A stretch of DNA of 64,000 bases from Saccharolobus solfataricus P2. GTDB lineage: Archaea; Thermoproteota; Thermoprotei_A; Sulfolobales; Sulfolobaceae. Below the pieces are notes generated by a model. That model made no database searches. It was not told where the DNA came from and saw only the letters and a program-made list of their open reading frames with translations. Made by a program: the position numbers and the translations under genes. The stretch is taken from assembly GCF_000007005.1 (NCBI RefSeq), contig NC_002754.1, one strand, 5' to 3'. This document shows, in pieces, positions 27,711-62,597 of the stretch; within the stretch, counting starts at the first letter, position 1, and every line of letters begins with the position of its first letter.

Positions 27711-29105
27711 ATGCTTAAGGACGATATCCTAAAATTACTAAAGGAGGATGCGGAGTTTAGAAAACAAGTAGAGGAAATATTAGGTATTTCATTTATAAAT
27801 GTGACTCTAGCCGACTTAAAGGATATATTGAAAGGGTTATTAGCATCAATGGATAAACTAAAGAGTTCTGTAGATCAGCTGGTTGATGCTCAAAGAAGGG
27901 CGGAAGAAAGAATAGCGAAGCTTGAAAATGCAGTGGAGCAACTGGTTGAGGCGCAAAAGAGGACTGATGAGAGAATAACTAAATTGGAGGAGTCTACGAA
28001 GAAGTTGGAGCAAGCTGTACAAGAGCTTATTGAGGCTCAGAAAAAACATGATGAGAGAATAACTAAATTGGAGGAGTCTACGAAGAAGTTGGAGCAAGCT
28101 GTACAAGAGCTTATTGAGGCTCAGAAAAAACATGATGAGAGAATAACTAAATTGGAGGAGTCTACGAAGAAGTTGGAGCAAGCTGTACAAGAGCTTATTG
28201 AGGCTCAGAAAAAACATGATGAGAGAATAACTAAATTGGAGGAGTCTACGAAGAAGTTGGAGCAAGCTGTACAAGAGCTTATTGAGGCTCAGAAAAAACA
28301 TGATGAGAGAATAACTAAATTGGAGGAGTCTACGAAGAAGTTGGAGCAAGCTGTACAAGAGCTTATTGAGGCTCAGAAAAAACATGATGAGAGAATAACT
28401 AAATTGGAGGAGTCTACGAAGAAGTTGGAGCAAGCTGTACAAGAGCTTATTGAGGCTCAGAAAAAACATGATGAGAGAATAACTAAATTGGAGGAGTCTA
28501 TACAGAAATTGGTTGATGCTCAAAGAAGGGCGGAAGAAAGAATAGCGAAGCTTGAAAATGCAGTGGAGCAACTGGTTGAGGCGCAAAAGAGGACTGATGA
28601 GAGAATAACTAAATTGGAGGAGGTTACTATGAAATTAGTTGAATCTCAATTAGGTATGCAAAATGAGATTAGAGAGTTAAGGAAAGCTTTAGGAAGTATG
28701 GGTAAAAGGTGGGGAAGGGATTTTGAAAAGCTAATAATTGAAATAGTCGACGAGTTAGCTAAGCAAGAAGGACTAGATTTAAAGTACGTTAATAAGTTCA
28801 CTTACAAGGATGATAATGGATTATTTGGTCTTAAAGGTGTTGAATATGATGTTGATCTCTTGATAAAGGACACTAAAGTGTATTTGATAGAGATTAAGTC
28901 CTATGTAGAGAAAGATGATGTGAACTGGGCTGCACATAAATTCAATGTGATAGAAAAGGCTTTAGGTCTAAAGAATACTATCAAAATGATATTTGCAGTT
29001 GATGCTACAAATTTAGCAACAAAGAAGGGTGAAGAGTTGGGAATTAAAGTCGTATACGGAAGTCAATCCGAGGAGGAAGAGAAAGGAGAAGTAAAGGTAG
29101 GTTGA
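27711..29105 (+). CDS. Long coiled-coil protein with C-terminal PD-(D/E)XK nuclease-like domain
   Basis: Heptad repeats; C-terminal G..FE, DVD...EIKS motif. Confidence 0.8.
   Translation: MLKDDILKLLKEDAEFRKQVEEILGISFINVTLADLKDILKGLLASMDKLKSSVDQLVDAQRRAEERIAKLENAVEQLVEAQKRTDERITKLEESTKKLEQAVQELIEAQKKHDERITKLEESTKKLEQAVQELIEAQKKHDERITKLEESTKKLEQAVQELIEAQKKHDERITKLEESTKKLEQAVQELIEAQKKHDERITKLEESTKKLEQAVQELIEAQKKHDERITKLEESTKKLEQAVQELIEAQKKHDERITKLEESIQKLVDAQRRAEERIAKLENAVEQLVEAQKRTDERITKLEEVTMKLVESQLGMQNEIRELRKALGSMGKRWGRDFEKLIIEIVDELAKQEGLDLKYVNKFTYKDDNGLFGLKGVEYDVDLLIKDTKVYLIEIKSYVEKDDVNWAAHKFNVIEKALGLKNTIKMIFAVDATNLATKKGEELGIKVVYGSQSEEEEKGEVKVG
27966..28500 (+). repeat. Six perfect 84-bp tandem repeats plus a partial seventh, inside the CDS
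   Basis: Unit starts at 27966, 28050, 28134, 28218, 28302, 28386, 28470; encodes DERITKLEESTKKLEQAVQELIEAQKKH. Confidence 0.95.
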
Positions 29106-34785: not shown

Positions 34786-35866
34786 TATACTTCGTCAGAC
34801 TTTAAAGGGCAAGAAAACTTCACTCAGTATTGACGTCCAAGGTTCACCGCACCTCTTCACACTATACGTAAGGTCATTTACTCTCTTGGATATGGAGCGT
34901 AGGAACCTCGTTGCATCCCACATTAAGGTCTCGAAGTCCGTGTAAATCTTCGAGTAGAGCCTTTTCTTGAGGACTGCCCACGGCCCCTCCGCCGGACTCT
35001 TATCCGGAGAGTAAGGCGGCAGATAAACAAACTCCACCCCATTTTCCTCAAGGAATTCCCTCACTTCATTACCGTGTATTCTAGCATTATCCATCACTAT
35101 CACGGTCTTCTCGTCCTTTATTACCTTCCTCAAGTAGAGTATAATATCTTTTGAGTTCAGCGAGGGCTTCTTGTATGTCGAATAGGAGAAAGTTATTCCC
35201 TCTTTACTAATCGTTATCCCGCCTACTACTGCAAACCTCTTCCTCTTAGGGTTGACCTTTATCCCTCCTCCGACCTTCATCCAGCCTTTACCCTTGTTTA
35301 TGTAGGACACGTACGACTCATCGAAGATGTGTACCTTGTACCCTTCTCTTATTTTTTTAAAAGCTTCTCCCCTTGTTCCTTCACCCACCTTTCTACAGCG
35401 TTATCGTCTCTAACGTAAGTTCTCTTTCCTTTCTTGTACTTGAAGCCTAATTTCTTGAGGACTGGGCTTAAACTCCTCGGGTTGTACTTTATCCCAAATT
35501 CCTTGTCAAGTATATACGCTATGAGCTTCAAGGTCCAGAAATCGTAGTTCAAGCCGAAATCTCTTGGGCTCTTTTCTAAGATTCGGACGAGCTTTTCCTC
35601 GTCCTTCAGTTTCGTGGGTCCCTTCCTCGGCTTAGCGCTCAGGTCACCTTTCCTCAACCACTTGTACACGGTAAAGATGGAGACGTCATACTTCTTGGCA
35701 ACGTCCTTTATACTCATCCCGTTCCTCACATCTTTTACAGCGTTAATCCTCCTCTCTTCCTCTTGTTTCTTGTTGAGCCTTATACCGTGCATTCTGGATT
35801 TCGGCATAACAATTTAGTATTACTCATGAAATATAAATCTTGCTCTTTAAAGTCTGACGAAGTATA
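34786..35866 (-). mobile_element. ISC1078-like IS630 element with orfA/orfB
   Basis: 22-bp TIR TATACTTCGTCAGACTTTAAAG, TA duplication. Confidence 0.88.
34795..35807 (-). CDS. IS630 transposase expressed as orfA (35807-35349) plus orfB via a probable -1 frameshift
   Basis: orfA HTH ends CTT TTA AAA AAA TAA; orfB in the -1 frame has FDES, MDNA, PPYSPD. Confidence 0.8.
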
Positions 35867-36285: not shown

Positions 36286-37146
36286 CTAAATATTTGAAAA
36301 CTTCTTGAAGGCATCATCTAGTGAGAACCTCCTAATACTTATTATCTCGATTCCATTATCATCTAACTTATCTACTATCTCCCTTAACTTACCTTTAACC
36401 TTTATATAAGGTCCTTCAAGTATTCCTCCCAATAATTTCAAAGCTCTATCAGTATCGTCTACCATTACGTAAATTTCTTCCTCTTCGGTATCGCTTAAAG
36501 CCTTGTTCATCCTGCCTGAGTATGTAATTCTTCCGTCATTAATAAATATTACATCAGTTATAACTTTTTCGAGCTCTGAGAGTATATGAGATGAAATGAA
36601 AAACGTTACACCATTTTTCCTATTCAACTCCTTCACTACCTCATAAAACTCTATTCTAAAGGAGGGATCTAGATTGGCAGTGGGTTCGTCTGCTATTATC
36701 AACTCAACATCCTTTATTAATGCAGCTACTAATTGAACTCTTTGGGCTAAACCAGAGGATAGTTGATAAAGCCTCTTATTAAGGTGAGGAGTTAACTTAA
36801 ATTCCTCAATTAGATAGTTAATTATCTCCCTCTTTTTCCCATAAACATTTCCCAGATCCATCAAATATTCCCCTACTGTGTTCTCTTGAGGATGAATTAA
36901 GTTAGTGAAAATAACTGAAATTCTCTCCATGACCTTTGGGTTATCCCAAGGATCTTCACCAAATACTTTAACAAACCCTCCGTCCTTTCTTAACAACCCA
37001 GAAAGTATTTTTATTGTAGTCGTTTTTCCAGCACCATTTGGTCCAATAAAACCAGTTATTGATCCACTTCTGAGTTTAAAACTAACGCCCTTAAGTACTT
37101 CTTTACCAGCAAACTTTTTCCTTAAATCCTCAACTTCAATAGTCAT
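36286..37146 (-). CDS. ABC transporter ATP-binding protein (exporter type)
   Basis: [20 protein letters not shown]. Confidence 0.93.
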
Positions 37147-37186: not shown

Positions 37187-38941
37187 TTAAACTATCACAG
37201 CTTTCACTAACCCTGGAGGAGTATCTATCGGCAACCCTTTCCTAACTCCCAGTTTATAGGCCAATAAGTGTAACGGTATTACATTGCTTATGGGAGTTAA
37301 ATCCCTAGTAGCCTTTATACTTTTCATATCACCATCTTCAGCAACGGTCACAATTACATCTCCTCTTTCCTTTATAGATCTAATAACCTTGTTATATAAA
37401 TCCTCAGCCTCCACAGGTTTTATTAAAATTACGGGGTAACCTTTATTTGTTAGAACAATGGGACCGTGGAGGAGTTCTCCCAGCTGAATCCCCTCTGCGT
37501 GAGTCATCGAAGCTTCCTTAAACTTCAAAGCTCCTTCTAAGGCTATGGGGTAATTTATACCACTACTCGAAATGTATAAGCTTTCCTTGTCTAATTTAGG
37601 AGCCAATTTCTCTGCCTCTTTCTCCATCTCCGGTAACCTTACCATTAACTGTTTAGCCAATTCTTCAATCTCACTTTTTAACGAACTGATCTCACTCCTA
37701 TCGTTTTTACCAGAGTGAAGTCCAGTGTATAGCGAAAGCACTTTTAATACTACAATAGTTGAAGTGAAAGTTTTTGTCGCTGGTACAGCCATCTCTGGCC
37801 CAGCAGTTATTGGTAAGTACACGTTAGATTCTAAGGCTAATCTTGAACCTACAGAGTTGGTTATACCTAATATTACAGCCCCTCTTTGCTTAGCCATTTT
37901 AATACTCCTTATAACATCACTTGTCTCCCCACTTTGACTTATAGCAATAATTACCGAACCAGTAGTCACGTTTTTCAAGGCGTAATAGGGAAACTCCGCT
38001 GCACTTACAACATTAACATTTAGGCTAATTTCAGAAAAGTAATATGATGAGATAAATCCAGCGTGAAGACTAGTCCCATTACCTATTATATAGACGTTCT
38101 TGGCACCATATACTATCATTGAGGCTAAGGAAAGGTACTTTTCCATTAGAGAGTTAAATGAGTTTATTAACGCTTGTGGGATATCGTATATCTCCTTTAA
38201 CATGAAGTGTGGAAATCCACCCTTTTCAGCGATCTCCTCCTTATATTTAACTCTCTTAATTTCCGGTTTTACCTCATTACCTTCAATATTATACACTTGC
38301 ACATCATTCCAAGAGATTACTGCCACAGTATTTTCTGGCATTATTATCGCATTCTCAGCAAAACCGCTCAAAGAGGGTAAATCGCTAGAAACGTATTTAC
38401 ACTCTTGTGTGATACCTATCATCAAGGGTTGGCCAGAGTTAATTGCGAATATTTTATCAATGTCTATGGTTACAAAAACCAGAGAGTAAATGCCCTTTAC
38501 CCTTTTCATAACGTTTAATGATGAGTTTAGATAGTTTGTTGAATTCTCAAGTAAGTGGGGAATCACCTCAGCGTCAGTTGTAGAGACGAATTTATGTCCC
38601 TTCGCAATCAGATCTTCCCTAATTTTTTCGTAATCGTCAAGAATACCGTCCATTACAACTGCTATCTTCCCATTACAATCAGTCAGTGGGTGAGCGTTTT
38701 CCAAAGTTGGCCAACCCCTACTCGCATATCTAGTGTGACCTATTGCAACTCTTGCCTTGTCACTAACGCTTATCTCATTCTTTGAGATATTACCTAAAAT
38801 TTTCTTTATTACTAAGCTATCGTCTTCAAGGTAAGCAATACCAGCGCTATCATATCCCCTATAAATCAACTTCTTTAAACCCTTGTTAATAATTGAAACA
38901 TCAATGGAATCCTTGCATACGAAAGCGAAAATTCCTCCCAT
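37187..38941 (-). CDS. glmS: GlmS-like protein (glutaminase-like plus two SIS domains) lacking the catalytic Cys1
   Basis: N-term [36 protein letters not shown]. Confidence 0.8.
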
Positions 38942-38975
38942 ACTTAAATTTTAGTTTTGGTTATAAAAAGGAATT

Positions 38976-39467
38976 CTAACCCTCATTTCCCTGCTTAATC
39001 GAGGTAAATACACCTAAAATCAGACTATACACTTCTGGGTGAACTATAGACAAATTGCTGAATAGTTTTCTAATCTGTATTGGTTCAATATTATTTAATA
39101 TTTTCATAACGATTTTTATTGGAATGTTAATTTCCCTTAACTTATTTTCAATTATTCTCTTTACATCATCTTTAACCTCAAATACCTTTAACGTATTATA
39201 CGCTGTAACACTTCTGAGAGCTCTAGCCTTCCATACATCTCTATGGTTAACAATTGCCAAAACGATCGGAATTCCTAGATCAATATCACCCAGTTCCTCG
39301 TATATGTAGTAAAGATAATATGCAGTATATACTTCATTTCCTATTGCGCTCTGTAAGATTATAGCAAGCTCAATGTACTTTTTAACTTTCTCCTCATCTT
39401 TCTTAATCCTATTGGCGATTATGGGGACAACGTAATAATACTCTCTCCTAAACTTCTCTAAATCCAT
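38976..39467 (-). CDS. Degenerate Cas3''-like HD-fold protein (metal ligands lost)
   Basis: LAIILQSAIG where Cas3'' has LHDxGK; NEVYTAYY for HE..SA; LAIVNH; coupled to a Cas3'-like gene. Confidence 0.6.
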   Translation of the reverse strand: MDLEKFRREYYYVVPIIANRIKKDEEKVKKYIELAIILQSAIGNEVYTAYYLYYIYEELGDIDLGIPIVLAIVNHRDVWKARALRSVTAYNTLKVFEVKDDVKRIIENKLREINIPIKIVMKILNNIEPIQIRKLFSNLSIVHPEVYSLILGVFTSIKQGNEG

Positions 39468-40852
39468 TCTTCCACATCTCTGGCCTTTAACCCTAAAAAC
39501 ACCTTCTTTTTTCCTTCTTCCTCAACATAATTCTTATAAGCCCTTGCTAAATTCCTCTTAAGCCATGAAACACCTCCGCCTTCTAACCAATTATAAACTA
39601 TCTTAGAGCATTTTTCTCCATCAGTAAAGTACGTGTAAACGCAGCTATTTCCGTAGTATAATATCTTCTTTTTGTTCTCGTATACAAACTCGGGAGGTAC
39701 TGTAGTTATTTTCTCTTTATCAGTAAATAGATCGACTGTTACGAAATCACTGAAGACTTCTGTCACCTTCTCGAACTCCCTTCTATCCATTAAGTGGCTT
39801 ATTTCACTTAGCCTTTTTATAAGCCTTTCATCAATGTTAGGCTTTAAGACCGTCTTGTTAGCATATCCCATCTTTCCATTACAGCCAAAGGGATGTTTTA
39901 AGCATACTTTGATATTTGAAAGTAGATTAAGAGTACTTTCAGTCACTGTATCGTAATTATCCCTATCAATCCAGACGTAGATCTTATCCTTATCGTTAAT
40001 AATTCCACTTCTAGCTACAATAGTTGGTAATGATGAAATTTCGCTCACCACGTTAAACCTAGTAGGCATAATTTTAGGTGTAATAGTCACTTTGCATTCA
40101 TCACTACTATTAAGTAAACATACCTCAGTATTTCTTTCCTCCCTTAACTTTCTGTATAATCTCAACGCCTTTTCCCAAGAATTTACGAAAAGCGTAAATG
40201 GTTCCTTTACCTTAAATACCTCTTCACCTTTAATGATCTCATAATCTAAATCCCTAATGTCAAAATCCTCAATTAATTCAATCACTTCGTAACTACCCCT
40301 ACACTGATAATATCCCTCACCTTTCTTCACGCAATCCCTACCCTCAACCGCTTGCCCATATTCATTAACTATTGAAATAGATACCACTCTTCTATTTCTA
40401 AATCTACTTACTATCTCCTCCTCAAAGAATACCGAAGGTGTTGAAGTAGAGAAAATTGCGTTAATGCCATTCCTCGCCAATTCGTCAGCTGCAGCAATTA
40501 AAGCCTTATCTGGCATCATTCGATACTCATCTAAGATGACTAGTGAGGTAAGGATGTTAAATCTTGGGATTTCAGAAATTGCGCTACTGTAAAGGTTTAA
40601 AAAGAATTTACTGAAATGTAGTTGTGTATCCTCATAATCGTTAGGAACTACGCGAGTTAATCTTGAAAAGTTATTAGTCATATGTTTTGATAAATAGTTT
40701 TCAAGTGGTGAAATTACATCTTTTAAATAACCGATGGGTAAATTCAAGATGAAGTTAACATCATCGCATATTGAAAATTTTCTTCTGTTAATTTCCCTCT
40801 CAGTCTCCTTACAGTTTAAAAGCTCAAGGACTTTTCCTATCATTCTTAACAC
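39458..40852 (-). CDS. Degenerate Cas3'-like SF2 helicase (type I-A-like, predicted inactive)
   Basis: [11 protein letters not shown] (motif I), RLTRVVP (Ia), [18 protein letters not shown] (II), FSTST (III), [16 protein letters not shown] (IV), IVARSG (VI). Confidence 0.7.
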
Positions 40853-41298
40853 TTTATGTCAAATGAAATCTCGAGTAACTGTTTACTATTCCTATATCTC
40901 CAATAGTCCTTGATGATCTCTCCAATCTCAGAGGTAAACTTAGTATGTTGCTTATTGCAAGCATTAATACTCCAATCTGGTATTACCACAATGCTTAACT
41001 CCCTAACCTCAGCTGAAATAAGAAAGAGATCGTAGATCTCATCTCCATATTTCCTTTCAGCTTCTTCCCTAGGTAAAACCTCAATTATTATTGGAAGGTT
41101 TTTTCTAACCTTCTCGTTAGCCAATTCAAAGACCTTATCCATTTCCTGATCGCTAGGTTTCCTCTCAAACTTTACCGTTAATCTCCCATGATTGCTATTA
41201 ACGTAAGTGCTTGCAGTCCATTTGGCACCCAAAACTTTCCTCACAGCTCCTTTGACCACATGTAAGGCGGTGTGAGTGCGAATCTCAACTTGATCCAT
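40846..41298 (-). CDS. alaXS: AlaX-S free-standing alanyl-tRNA editing protein
   Basis: RTHTALH (HxxxH) and ACNKQH (CxxxH); very like Pyrococcus AlaX-S. Confidence 0.9.
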
Positions 41299-41333
41299 GT
41301 CAAATATATTATCCTCAAAGCCTTTTATATAGT

Positions 41334-62411: not shown

Positions 62412-62597
62412 GGGCGATTCAGATACCCATTGCGAATTCACTTTATTTTAAAGATTGCTACAAAATATTTTAAAGATTGCTACAAAATTAACTAAATGAA
62501 GGCGACTAACTGGCAGAGATACATGATTACCAAATGTTAACATTTTTACAACGTATTATTTACAAATTACAATTCGCAAAAGACACCTGAATCACCC
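62412..62597. mobile_element. SM2-like MITE (186 bp, ISC1217-related TIR)
   Basis: GGGCGATTCAG...TTGCGAATT / AATTCGCAA...CTGAATCACCC; internal ~20-bp tandem duplication. Confidence 0.75.

What the first reader, a model, noticed from the sequence alone, without database searches (positions are those of the whole stretch)
39458..40852. Cas3'-like helicase with its recognisable SF2 motifs altered
Motifs occur in the right order but altered. Walker A PIGYLKD (aa 39-45) replaces PTGYGKT. Motif II DEYR (108-111) replaces DExH but sits in [16 protein letters not shown], close to the recalled Sulfolobales Cas3' EIPRGMIYSSLVIFDEFH. Motif III is FSTST for MSAT, motif IV is [22 protein letters not shown] stands for LIHS, and motif [10 protein letters not shown] replaces QRAGR. 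The segment between motifs Ia and II is shortened. Predicted to be ATPase-dead but folded. Extra Cys pairs (DC..QC, VC..GC) might bind metal.
Basis: partly seen in the sequence, partly recalled or inferred. Interest (0 to 1): 0.78.

Follow-up and report, generated by a model that had tools for sequence, protein, structure and literature searches.

The report
Dead orphan Cas3 helicase–nuclease gene pair
This Saccharolobus islandicus gene and the small gene overlapping its end are catalytically degenerate copies of the CRISPR type I-A helicase Cas3' and nuclease Cas3'', kept intact by selection far from any CRISPR locus, so they probably now do a non-enzymatic job that nobody has yet tested.

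Summary
ORF 39458..40852(-) is real; its likely start is the ATG at 40843, giving 461 aa.

The protein descends from crenarchaeal type I-A Cas3'. It matches the PADLOC Cas3a1 profile at E 2e-65. It nests beside the active Acidianus manzaensis Cas3' in a tree. Its AlphaFold model's best PDB match is a Cas3 helicase.

All SF2 motifs are degenerate or deleted: I, Ia, Ib, II (His only), III, IV, V and VI. It scores 18.7 bits on TIGR01587 (cutoff 102.45); active relatives score 129-186.

- The overlapping downstream ORF 38976..39467(-) is an equally degenerate Cas3'' HD nuclease.
- The pair follows alaX, apparently as one operon. This arrangement is conserved in S. solfataricus and S. tengchongensis, with no cas gene or CRISPR array in the window.
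- Both genes are under purifying selection (dN/dS about 0.15-0.20).

The "extra" Cys pairs are also present in active relatives.

arCOG already labels the genes Cas3/Cas3'' (M164_0463/0464 = SSO1270, SiRe_0421/0422). Tn-seq calls both non-essential. I found no paper describing their inactivation. The function is inferred: a dead Cas3'-Cas3'' binding module.

The parts
39458..40852 (-). Degenerate Cas3' helicase paralogue (dCas3'). The mechanical ORF is 464 aa from GTG 40852. The probable CDS is 39458..40843 (461 aa, ATG). It is the orthologue of M164_0463 / SSO1270 / SiRe_0421.
   Evidence: ORF. PADLOC Cas3a1 2.3e-65. TIGR01587 only 18.7 bits. Motif-by-motif degeneration in A2. Cas3 fold. dN/dS 0.15-0.20. 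Locus tags and arCOG01444.
38976..39467 (-). Degenerate Cas3'' HD-nuclease paralogue (dCas3''), 163 aa. Its ATG overlaps the last 10 nt of dCas3'. It is the orthologue of M164_0464 / SiRe_0422.
   Evidence: PADLOC Cas3a2 2.3e-27 and Cas3 1.4e-23. 32% identity, E 2e-17, to the A. manzaensis Cas3''. HD dyad LHD->LQS, GHE->GNE, N-terminal His motif and C-terminal Asp region deleted. The model's top two PDB hits are Cas3-HD 7tra_Q and 3s4l. dN/dS 0.15-0.19. arCOG01443.
40846..41298 (-). alaX (AlaX-S, Ser-tRNA(Ala) deacylase), apparently the first gene of the same transcription unit. Its TAA stop lies 2 nt before the dCas3' ATG.
   Evidence: NCBIfam alaS/AlaXM editing-domain hits. Highly conserved AlaX orthologues. 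Junction sequence. M164_0462 AlaX.
41323..41332 (-). TATA-like box (ctatataaaa) about 30 nt upstream of the alaX ATG. Inferred promoter of a leaderless alaX-dcas3'-dcas3'' transcript.
   Evidence: Read directly from the sequence. Inference only, with no transcript data.
38961..38969 (-). T-rich stretch and TATA-like box (tttttataa) between the dCas3'' stop and the glmS ATG (38941). It suggests glmS has its own promoter and that the three-gene unit ends here.
   Evidence: Read directly from the sequence. Inference only.

Best explanation
The locus encodes a catalytically dead Cas3'/Cas3'' pair, a remnant of a type I-A CRISPR interference module.

Origin. The module was related to those of Acidianus, Sulfurisphaera and S. 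acidocaldarius. It landed downstream of alaX in the ancestor of Saccharolobus islandicus, solfataricus and shibatae and 'Sulfolobus' tengchongensis.

What the helicase lost (shown by alignment):
- The P-loop Gly and Thr (PIGYLKD).
- Motifs Ia and Ib (Ib by deletion).
- The motif II His.
- Motifs IV and V.
- The second Arg of motif VI.

What the nuclease lost (shown by alignment): the HD dyad and at least three further metal-ligand positions.

Selection. Both reading frames are nevertheless kept under purifying selection and are translationally coupled.

Inferred mechanism. The two proteins fold and still bind each other as Cas3' and Cas3'' do in type I-A systems. They act as a non-enzymatic binding or scaffold module that neither burns ATP nor cuts DNA.

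My best single guess for the partner is the resident I-A Cascade, with a personal probability of about 0.25. A nuclease-dead Cas3'/Cas3'' docked there would give a non-cutting surveillance or regulatory complex, or would buffer the active pair. A new role tied to the alaX operon is the main alternative.
For: Descent from Cas3':
- PADLOC Cas3a1 E 2.3e-65.
- An exhaustive phmmer search finds only orthologues plus true Cas3' proteins that pass TIGR01587.
- The closest active relatives sit in canonical I-A cassettes next to cas genes and a CRISPR array of at least 67 repeats.
- In the tree the dead clade is monophyletic (100/100), sister to the A. manzaensis Cas3' (100/98), on a long stem of 0.78+0.47 substitutions per site.

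Fold:
- dCas3' model pLDDT 79.9, pTM 0.75; top PDB hit Cas3 helicase 8wtk at E 4.8e-13, TM 0.56/0.53.
- dCas3'' model pLDDT 85.8; its only credible hits are Cas3-HD 7tra_Q and 3s4l.

Inactivation:
- Motif alignments A2 and A3.
- TIGR01587 score falls from 129-186 bits (active) to 49.5 (S. tengchongensis) to 18.7 (window).

Maintained, not decaying:
- Intact ORFs in S. islandicus strains, S. shibatae, S. solfataricus, Sulfolobus sp. E5-1-F and S. tengchongensis, with conserved synteny where contexts were read (S. solfataricus, S. tengchongensis).
- dN/dS between S. islandicus and S. solfataricus is 0.15-0.20 for both genes, against 0.06-0.15 for neighbours.

Coupling: a 2-nt gap after alaX and a 10-nt overlap between the two genes.

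Orphan status: no other Cas homologue and no CRISPR array in the 64 kb window. In strain M.16.4 the canonical cas3'/cas3'' are M164_0912/0913, about 450 genes away from M164_0463/0464.
Against: - No biochemical, transcript or interaction data for these genes were found.
- Tn-seq shows both genes are dispensable in laboratory culture, with 14 unique insertions in M164_0463. Whatever they do is conditional.
- Lys44 of the P-loop, the D-E of motif II, and R281/G283 of motif VI are retained. The S. tengchongensis orthologue keeps GKT, RAGRALR and the HD dyad. Residual nucleotide binding therefore cannot be excluded, especially in that species.
- Heterodimer formation and Cascade docking are inferred only from what type I-A Cas3'/Cas3'' do in solved complexes (7tr8/7tra). 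They were not modelled here.
- The dN/dS estimate rests on one informative species pair, because dS is saturated against S. tengchongensis.
Confidence: 0.8

Rival explanations
1. Housekeeping exaptation unrelated to CRISPR. The dead pair has been recruited to the alaX operon and works with AlaX or in RNA/tRNA or protein quality control, for example as an RNA- or protein-binding adaptor.
For: Tight, apparently operonic linkage to alaX, conserved across species whose synonymous sites are saturated. The pair is far from any cas gene.
Against: alaX in S. caldissimus, S. acidocaldarius and A. manzaensis has no such neighbours, so AlaX does not need them. The canonical nucleic-acid-contact motifs Ia, Ib, IV and V are lost. 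Operon membership may simply reflect where the fragment inserted.
Confidence: 0.2
2. Functionless relic. A fragment of an old I-A cassette is decaying slowly and survives only because it rides in the alaX transcript.
For: Loss of every catalytic motif, multiple deletions (123 aa shorter than the closest active relative) and a long branch. Non-essential by Tn-seq.
Against: Both ORFs are intact in every genome seen, including one at 52-57% identity where dS is saturated. dN/dS of 0.15-0.20 is close to that of neighbouring housekeeping genes. The models are confidently folded. A neutral 1.4 kb ORF in a 36% GC genome would acquire stops quickly.
Confidence: 0.07
3. A divergent but still active helicase or ATPase that uses non-canonical residues.
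For: P-loop Lys44, the motif II Asp-Glu, and the first Arg and the Gly of motif VI are retained. Some databases name it 'RNA helicase'.
Against: In the P-loop, Gly->Leu and Thr->Asp. Motif Ib is deleted and motifs Ia, IV and V are replaced. The motif VI arginine finger is lost along with a 6-residue deletion. It matches no Pfam helicase domain, whereas its active relatives hit DEAD, ResIII and Helicase_C.
Confidence: 0.04

Closest known systems
Type I-A Cas3' helicase of Sulfolobales (e.g. Acidianus manzaensis WP_187152715 = P0009; Sulfurisphaera tokodaii BAK54126 = P0010, whose neighbour ST0032 is listed as the best hit of M164_0463 in that species; TIGR01587 cas3_core)
   Same: Clear common descent: 47% identity over matched stretches to P0009. 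It has the same RecA1, beta-insert, RecA2 and C-terminal-domain order. It shares the same conserved Cys pairs and the [11 protein letters not shown] signature. It is immediately followed by a Cas3'' gene that overlaps it.
   Different: All ATPase and translocation motifs are degenerate or deleted. It is 123 aa shorter. It scores far below the family cutoff (18.7 vs 102.45 bits). It is not in a cas operon and is not near a CRISPR array. It is co-oriented with alaX instead.
Type I-A Cas3'' HD nuclease (P. furiosus Cas3-HD in 7tra/7tr8; M. jannaschii MJ0384, 3s4l; A. manzaensis 227-aa Cas3'')
   Same: The companion 163-aa protein is homologous (E 2e-17, 32% identity) and is predicted to keep the helical HD-domain core.
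   Different: The HD dyad, the motif III His, the N-terminal His motif and the C-terminal Asp region are substituted or deleted. It is 50-65 aa shorter and is placed in its own arCOG01443, not arCOG01442.
Other inactivated or exapted Cas components: Cas10 with a dead Palm domain in III-C/G/H, nuclease-dead effectors in CRISPR-associated transposons, dead Cas12 variants (reviewed in PMC12669027)
   Same: Same evolutionary pattern. A Cas enzyme loses its catalytic residues yet is retained, implying a binding or regulatory role.
   Different: Those cases stay inside CRISPR-cas or transposon loci with a crRNA-guided complex. Here only the Cas3'/Cas3'' pair survives, in a housekeeping neighbourhood. 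I found no description of it.

Membership tests
Cas3' (type I CRISPR SF2 helicase, TIGR01587 / arCOG01444) | Sequence homology and common descent with Cas3' helicases | tested here: met
   PADLOC Cas3a1 E 2.3e-65 over aa 3-464. The only non-orthologous hits in 1.84 billion representatives are Cas3' proteins. It nests next to the A. manzaensis Cas3' with 100/98 support. arCOG01444 assignment.
Cas3' (type I CRISPR SF2 helicase, TIGR01587 / arCOG01444) | Scores above the curated TIGR01587 cutoff (102.45 bits) | tested here: not met
   18.7 bits, E 7.5e-4, aa 93-247 only. Active relatives score 129-186 bits. The S. tengchongensis orthologue scores 49.5.
Cas3' (type I CRISPR SF2 helicase, TIGR01587 / arCOG01444) | Two RecA-like domains plus the Cas3 C-terminal domain (fold) | tested here: met
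   AlphaFold pLDDT 79.9, pTM 0.75. Foldseek top hit is Cas3 8wtk at E 4.8e-13, TM 0.56/0.53, followed by Cas3 4q2d and 4qqw; the I-A Cas3 7tr8_A ranks further down (46th).
Cas3' (type I CRISPR SF2 helicase, TIGR01587 / arCOG01444) | Walker A / motif I GxGK[TS] | tested here: not met
   PTGYGKT -> PIGYLKD (G->L, T->D; Lys kept) in all Saccharolobus copies. S. tengchongensis keeps PTVYGKT.
Cas3' (type I CRISPR SF2 helicase, TIGR01587 / arCOG01444) | Motif II DExH | tested here: not met
   DEYH -> DEYR (window) or DEYQ (other orthologues). Asp-Glu are retained and His is lost.
Cas3' (type I CRISPR SF2 helicase, TIGR01587 / arCOG01444) | Nucleic-acid and coupling motifs Ia, Ib, III, IV, V | tested here: not met
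   VPTRAL->VPNDYE. TTYD is deleted within a 43-aa loss. SAT->STS. NTV->NSW. TQVIEVGVN->[10 protein letters not shown].
Cas3' (type I CRISPR SF2 helicase, TIGR01587 / arCOG01444) | Motif VI QRxGRxxR arginine finger | tested here: not met
   QRVGRVLR -> ARSGII followed by a 6-residue deletion. S. tengchongensis keeps ERAGRALR.
Cas3' (type I CRISPR SF2 helicase, TIGR01587 / arCOG01444) | Encoded in a type I cas operon near a CRISPR array | tested here: not met
   No CRISPR array in 64 kb. No homologue of Cas1, 2, 4', 5, 6, 7, 8a or Csa5 in any frame. Ten neighbouring ORFs have no Cas hits. The neighbours are alaX, glmS and mupG.
Cas3' (type I CRISPR SF2 helicase, TIGR01587 / arCOG01444) | ATP-dependent 3'-5' DNA unwinding | not testable with these tools
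   Needs recombinant protein. Predicted absent from motif loss.
Cas3'' (stand-alone HD nuclease of type I-A) | Homology and HD-domain fold (companion ORF 38976..39467) | tested here: met
   PADLOC Cas3a2 2.3e-27. BLASTP 2e-17 to the A. manzaensis Cas3''. The A3 profile hits 7tra_Q at E 0.006. The Foldseek top two hits are Cas3-HD proteins.
Cas3'' (stand-alone HD nuclease of type I-A) | HD-motif metal ligands (H ... HD ... H ... H ... D) | tested here: not met
   LHD->LQS with an 11-13-aa deletion of the GK loop. GHE->GNE. The N-terminal His segment and the C-terminal Asp segment are missing. Only the first His of the HH motif remains. S. tengchongensis keeps LHD.

The most novel reading that the evidence does not exclude
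A Cas3'/Cas3'' pair that lost all catalysis has been domesticated as a stand-alone regulator. One version: it docks onto the resident type I-A Cascade and converts it into a non-cutting DNA-binding complex. This would fit the Csa3b/Cascade-dependent repression of the cas promoter reported for S. islandicus (PMC5389559), or it could protect against self-targeting. The other version: it serves a wholly new role with the tRNA-editing protein AlaX. Either would be the first exapted Cas3 module outside a CRISPR or transposon context.
Probability: 0.25. Interest if true: 0.75.

Novelty: new variant of a known kind. Interest (0 to 1): 0.5.

Why it matters
Cas3 is the signature enzyme of type I CRISPR systems, and its homologues outside CRISPR loci are usually dismissed as generic helicases. 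Here both halves of a split I-A Cas3 have lost catalysis together. They are still conserved, co-translated and under purifying selection in the best genetic models of crenarchaeal CRISPR biology (S. islandicus REY15A and M.16.4, S. solfataricus P2).

This gives a directly testable case of Cas-protein exaptation. It is also a natural 'dead Cas3' that may reveal which Cas3'-Cas3''-Cascade contacts matter independently of catalysis.

Practically, it warns that arCOG, IMG and UniRef labels such as 'CRISPR-associated helicase Cas3' or 'RNA helicase' overstate what these genes can do. It also shows that counts of cas3 genes in Sulfolobales include non-functional paralogues.

Tried and rejected
- Pfam gave no significant domain for either protein. 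A single-sequence PDB search gave only chance ribosomal hits.
- The genome-contig scan with A2 returned only two distant Desulfurococcales/Thermoproteales loci and no further orthologues. I did not use them.
- P0009 could not be located by exact look-up. Its 590-aa variant P0030 could.
- I looked for expression or phenotype data. No paper text contains SSO1270, SSO1269, SSO1271, SiRe_0421, SiRe_0422 or M164_0463. Supplements of three transcriptome papers are not held, and the Wurtzel transcriptome paper is not held.
- The CRISPR reviews and classification papers I searched contain no mention of an orphan or inactive Cas3 pair in Sulfolobales.
- The source of PDB 8wtk could not be identified.
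- I rejected the idea of metal sites peculiar to this protein, because the Cys pairs are conserved in active relatives.
- I rejected a pseudogene reading on dN/dS and ORF integrity.
- I did not run the sigma-70 promoter scan, because the organism is an archaeon.
Full report

The window has about 36% GC. Its proteins are 99% identical to those of Saccharolobus islandicus.

ORF 39458..40852 on the minus strand is a 464-codon frame starting at a GTG. All database copies are 461 aa and start at the ATG at 40843, which lies 2 nt after the alaX stop codon.

**2. What is it?**

Curated profiles see little:
- Pfam sees nothing.
- NCBIfam TIGR01587 (cas3_core) gives only 18.7 bits (E 7.5e-4) over aa 93-247, against a cutoff of 102.45.

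Other evidence for homology is strong:
- The PADLOC/CCTyper profile Cas3a1 matches aa 3-464 at E 2.3e-65.
- An exhaustive phmmer scan of 1.84 billion representative proteins finds just eight hits.
- One of the eight is the protein's own cluster. The other seven are 555-667-aa proteins that all pass TIGR01587 at 129-186 bits.
- Three of the seven carry source names: Cas3' in Acidianus manzaensis and Sulfurisphaera tokodaii, and 'RNA helicase' in S. acidocaldarius SUSAZ.
- The S. tokodaii relative lies in a textbook I-A operon: cas2-cas1-csa1-csa5-cas7-cas5-cas8a-cas3'-cas3''-cas6.
- The A. manzaensis relative lies in csa5-cas7-cas5-cas8a-cas3', followed by a CRISPR array of at least 67 repeats and then a 227-aa Cas3''.

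A maximum-likelihood tree places the four degenerate proteins in one clade (100/100). They come from S. islandicus, Sulfolobus sp. E5-1-F, S. solfataricus and S. tengchongensis. The clade is sister to the active A. manzaensis Cas3' (100/98). It sits on a long stem of 0.78 plus 0.47 substitutions per site. The protein is therefore a derived, fast-evolved offshoot of a Sulfolobales I-A Cas3'.

**3. Motif states (alignment A2; deletions)**

| Motif | Active relatives | Window protein |
|---|---|---|
| I | PTGYGKT | PIGYLKD |
| Ia | VPTRAL | VPNDYE |
| Ib | TTYD | deleted, within 43 residues lost between Ia and II |
| II | FDEYH | LDEYR (DEYQ in other orthologues) |
| III | SATPS | STSTPS |
| IV | NTV | NSW |
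| HSRF region | CLxHSRF | CLLNS, plus a 9-aa deletion |
| V | TQVIEVGVN | [10 protein letters not shown] |
| VI | QRVGRVLR | ARSGII, plus a 6-aa deletion |

The protein is 123 aa shorter than the nearest active relative.

The S. tengchongensis orthologue (52-57% identical) is intermediate. It shares the Ia/Ib/V losses but keeps GKT and RAGRALR, and it scores 49.5 bits on TIGR01587. This suggests that the translocation elements were lost first and the ATPase site later.

The four Cys pairs (C14/C29, C174/C184, C245/C253, C317/C324) are conserved in the active relatives too. They are a subfamily trait, not a novelty of this protein.

**4. Fold**

With A2 as the alignment, AlphaFold2 gives pLDDT 79.9 and pTM 0.75. 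Only the shortened Ia-II linker (residues 71-96) is of low confidence.

The Foldseek best PDB match is a Cas3 helicase, 8wtk (E 4.8e-13, TM 0.56/0.53). Cas3 structures 4q2d and 4qqw follow, and the I-A Cascade Cas3 7tr8_A ranks further down, at 46th.

**5.

ORF 38976..39467(-), 163 aa, starts 10 nt before the dCas3' stop.

Evidence that it is a Cas3'' relative:
- It hits PADLOC Cas3a2 (2.3e-27) and Cas3 (1.4e-23).
- It is 32% identical (E 2e-17) to the A. manzaensis Cas3''.
- Its profile finds the P. furiosus I-A Cas3-HD.
- Its model (pLDDT 85.8) has Cas3-HD proteins 7tra_Q and 3s4l as its only credible structural matches.

Its metal ligands are largely gone:
- LHDxGK... becomes LQS, with the following loop deleted.
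- GHE becomes GNE.
- The N-terminal His segment and the C-terminal Asp segment are missing.

S. tengchongensis again keeps the HD dyad.

**6. Context**

No CRISPR array is present in the window. No other homologue of ten I-A Cas proteins is found in any reading frame. No Cas hit appears among ten flanking ORFs.

The gene order is mupG <- | -> alaX - dcas3' - dcas3'' - glmS. This order is conserved in S. solfataricus and S. tengchongensis.

The sequence suggests a three-gene unit (inference only):
- A TATA-like box lies about 30 nt before the alaX ATG.
- alaX, dcas3' and dcas3'' are tightly coupled.
- A second TATA-like box lies before glmS.

alaX in S. caldissimus, S. acidocaldarius and A. manzaensis has no such neighbours. 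The pair was therefore inserted in one lineage.

**7. Selection**

Between S. islandicus and S. solfataricus:
- dCas3' has dN/dS of 0.15 (NG86) to 0.20 (ML).
- dCas3'' has dN/dS of 0.15-0.19.
- alaX, mupG, glmS and the SBP gene have 0.06-0.15.

Against S. tengchongensis, synonymous sites are saturated, yet both frames remain open. This argues against a pseudogene.

**8. What is already known**

The supplement of the S. islandicus M.16.4 Tn-seq paper (PMC6249222) lists the following:

| Locus tag | Annotation | Notes |
|---|---|---|
| M164_0462 | AlaX | = SSO1271, SiRe_0420 |
| M164_0463 | 'Cas3, arCOG01444' | = SSO1270, SiRe_0421; 14 unique insertions; non-essential |
| M164_0464 | Cas3'', arCOG01443, HD superfamily nuclease | = SiRe_0422; non-essential |
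| M164_0465 | GlmS | second copy; not called essential |
| M164_0912 / M164_0913 | canonical I-A cas3' / cas3'' | about 450 genes away |

The homology is therefore already in the arCOG annotation. Other sources call the protein 'RNA helicase' or 'hypothetical protein'.

I found no paper text mentioning these locus tags. The CRISPR reviews and classifications I searched give no description of an inactive orphan Cas3 pair. That is absence from the library searched, not proof of absence.

**9. Mechanism**

Shown:
- Descent from I-A Cas3'/Cas3''.
- Loss of catalytic motifs in both proteins.
- Predicted retention of fold.
- Purifying selection.
- Orphan, alaX-linked context.

Inferred:
- The two proteins still pair, as Cas3' and Cas3'' do inside I-A Cascade (7tr8/7tra).
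- They act as a non-enzymatic binding module.

My preferred partner is the resident I-A Cascade. In S. islandicus, Cascade also acts with Csa3b as a transcriptional repressor (PMC5389559). I give this only about 0.25.

The alternatives are an alaX-linked role (about 0.2), a relic (about 0.07) and a cryptically active helicase (about 0.04).

**10. Verdict**

The finding is broader than stated: it is a dead pair, conserved and orphan. It is also less novel at the level of naming, because arCOG already calls these genes Cas3/Cas3''. I rate it a new variant of a known kind, of moderate interest, and directly testable in established laboratory strains.

Noticed in passing
window 27711..29105 (+), repeats at 27965-28500: A 464-aa coiled-coil protein with a C-terminal PD-(D/E)XK nuclease-like domain (PF07788, aa 380-446) and DUF3782. 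It carries 6.4 perfectly identical 84-nt (28-aa) tandem repeats, which suggests very recent repeat expansion.
   Followed up: partly
window 37187..38941 (-): The glmS next to the dead Cas3 pair appears to be a second GlmS copy. In S. islandicus M.16.4 the equivalent M164_0465 has 26 insertions and is not called essential, while M164_1770 is the essential glmS.
   Followed up: partly
L001 8001-9997 (Sulfolobus tengchongensis): The orthologous pair in S. tengchongensis is an evolutionary intermediate. Its helicase keeps GKT and RAGRALR, and its HD protein keeps the HD dyad, while both share the deletions. It may retain nucleotide or metal binding.
   Followed up: partly
L011 9774-17544 (Acidianus manzaensis): In the closest active relative's locus, cas3' is followed directly by a CRISPR array of at least 67 repeats (repeat GATTAATCCATTATGGAATTGAAAG). 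The cas3'' gene lies on the far side of the array, an unusual split of the I-A interference cassette.
   Followed up: partly
window 62444-62487: A perfect 22-nt tandem duplication (TATTTTAAAGATTGCTACAAAA x2) in an intergenic region.
   Followed up: no
window 35349..35807 (-) and 36286..37146 (-): A 152-aa ORF gives a weak PADLOC 'mad1' hit (27 bits). The adjacent ABC ATPase hits generic defence-ATPase profiles (mad3, AriA). This is most likely an ordinary ABC transporter (CcmA-type) and not a defence system.
   Followed up: no
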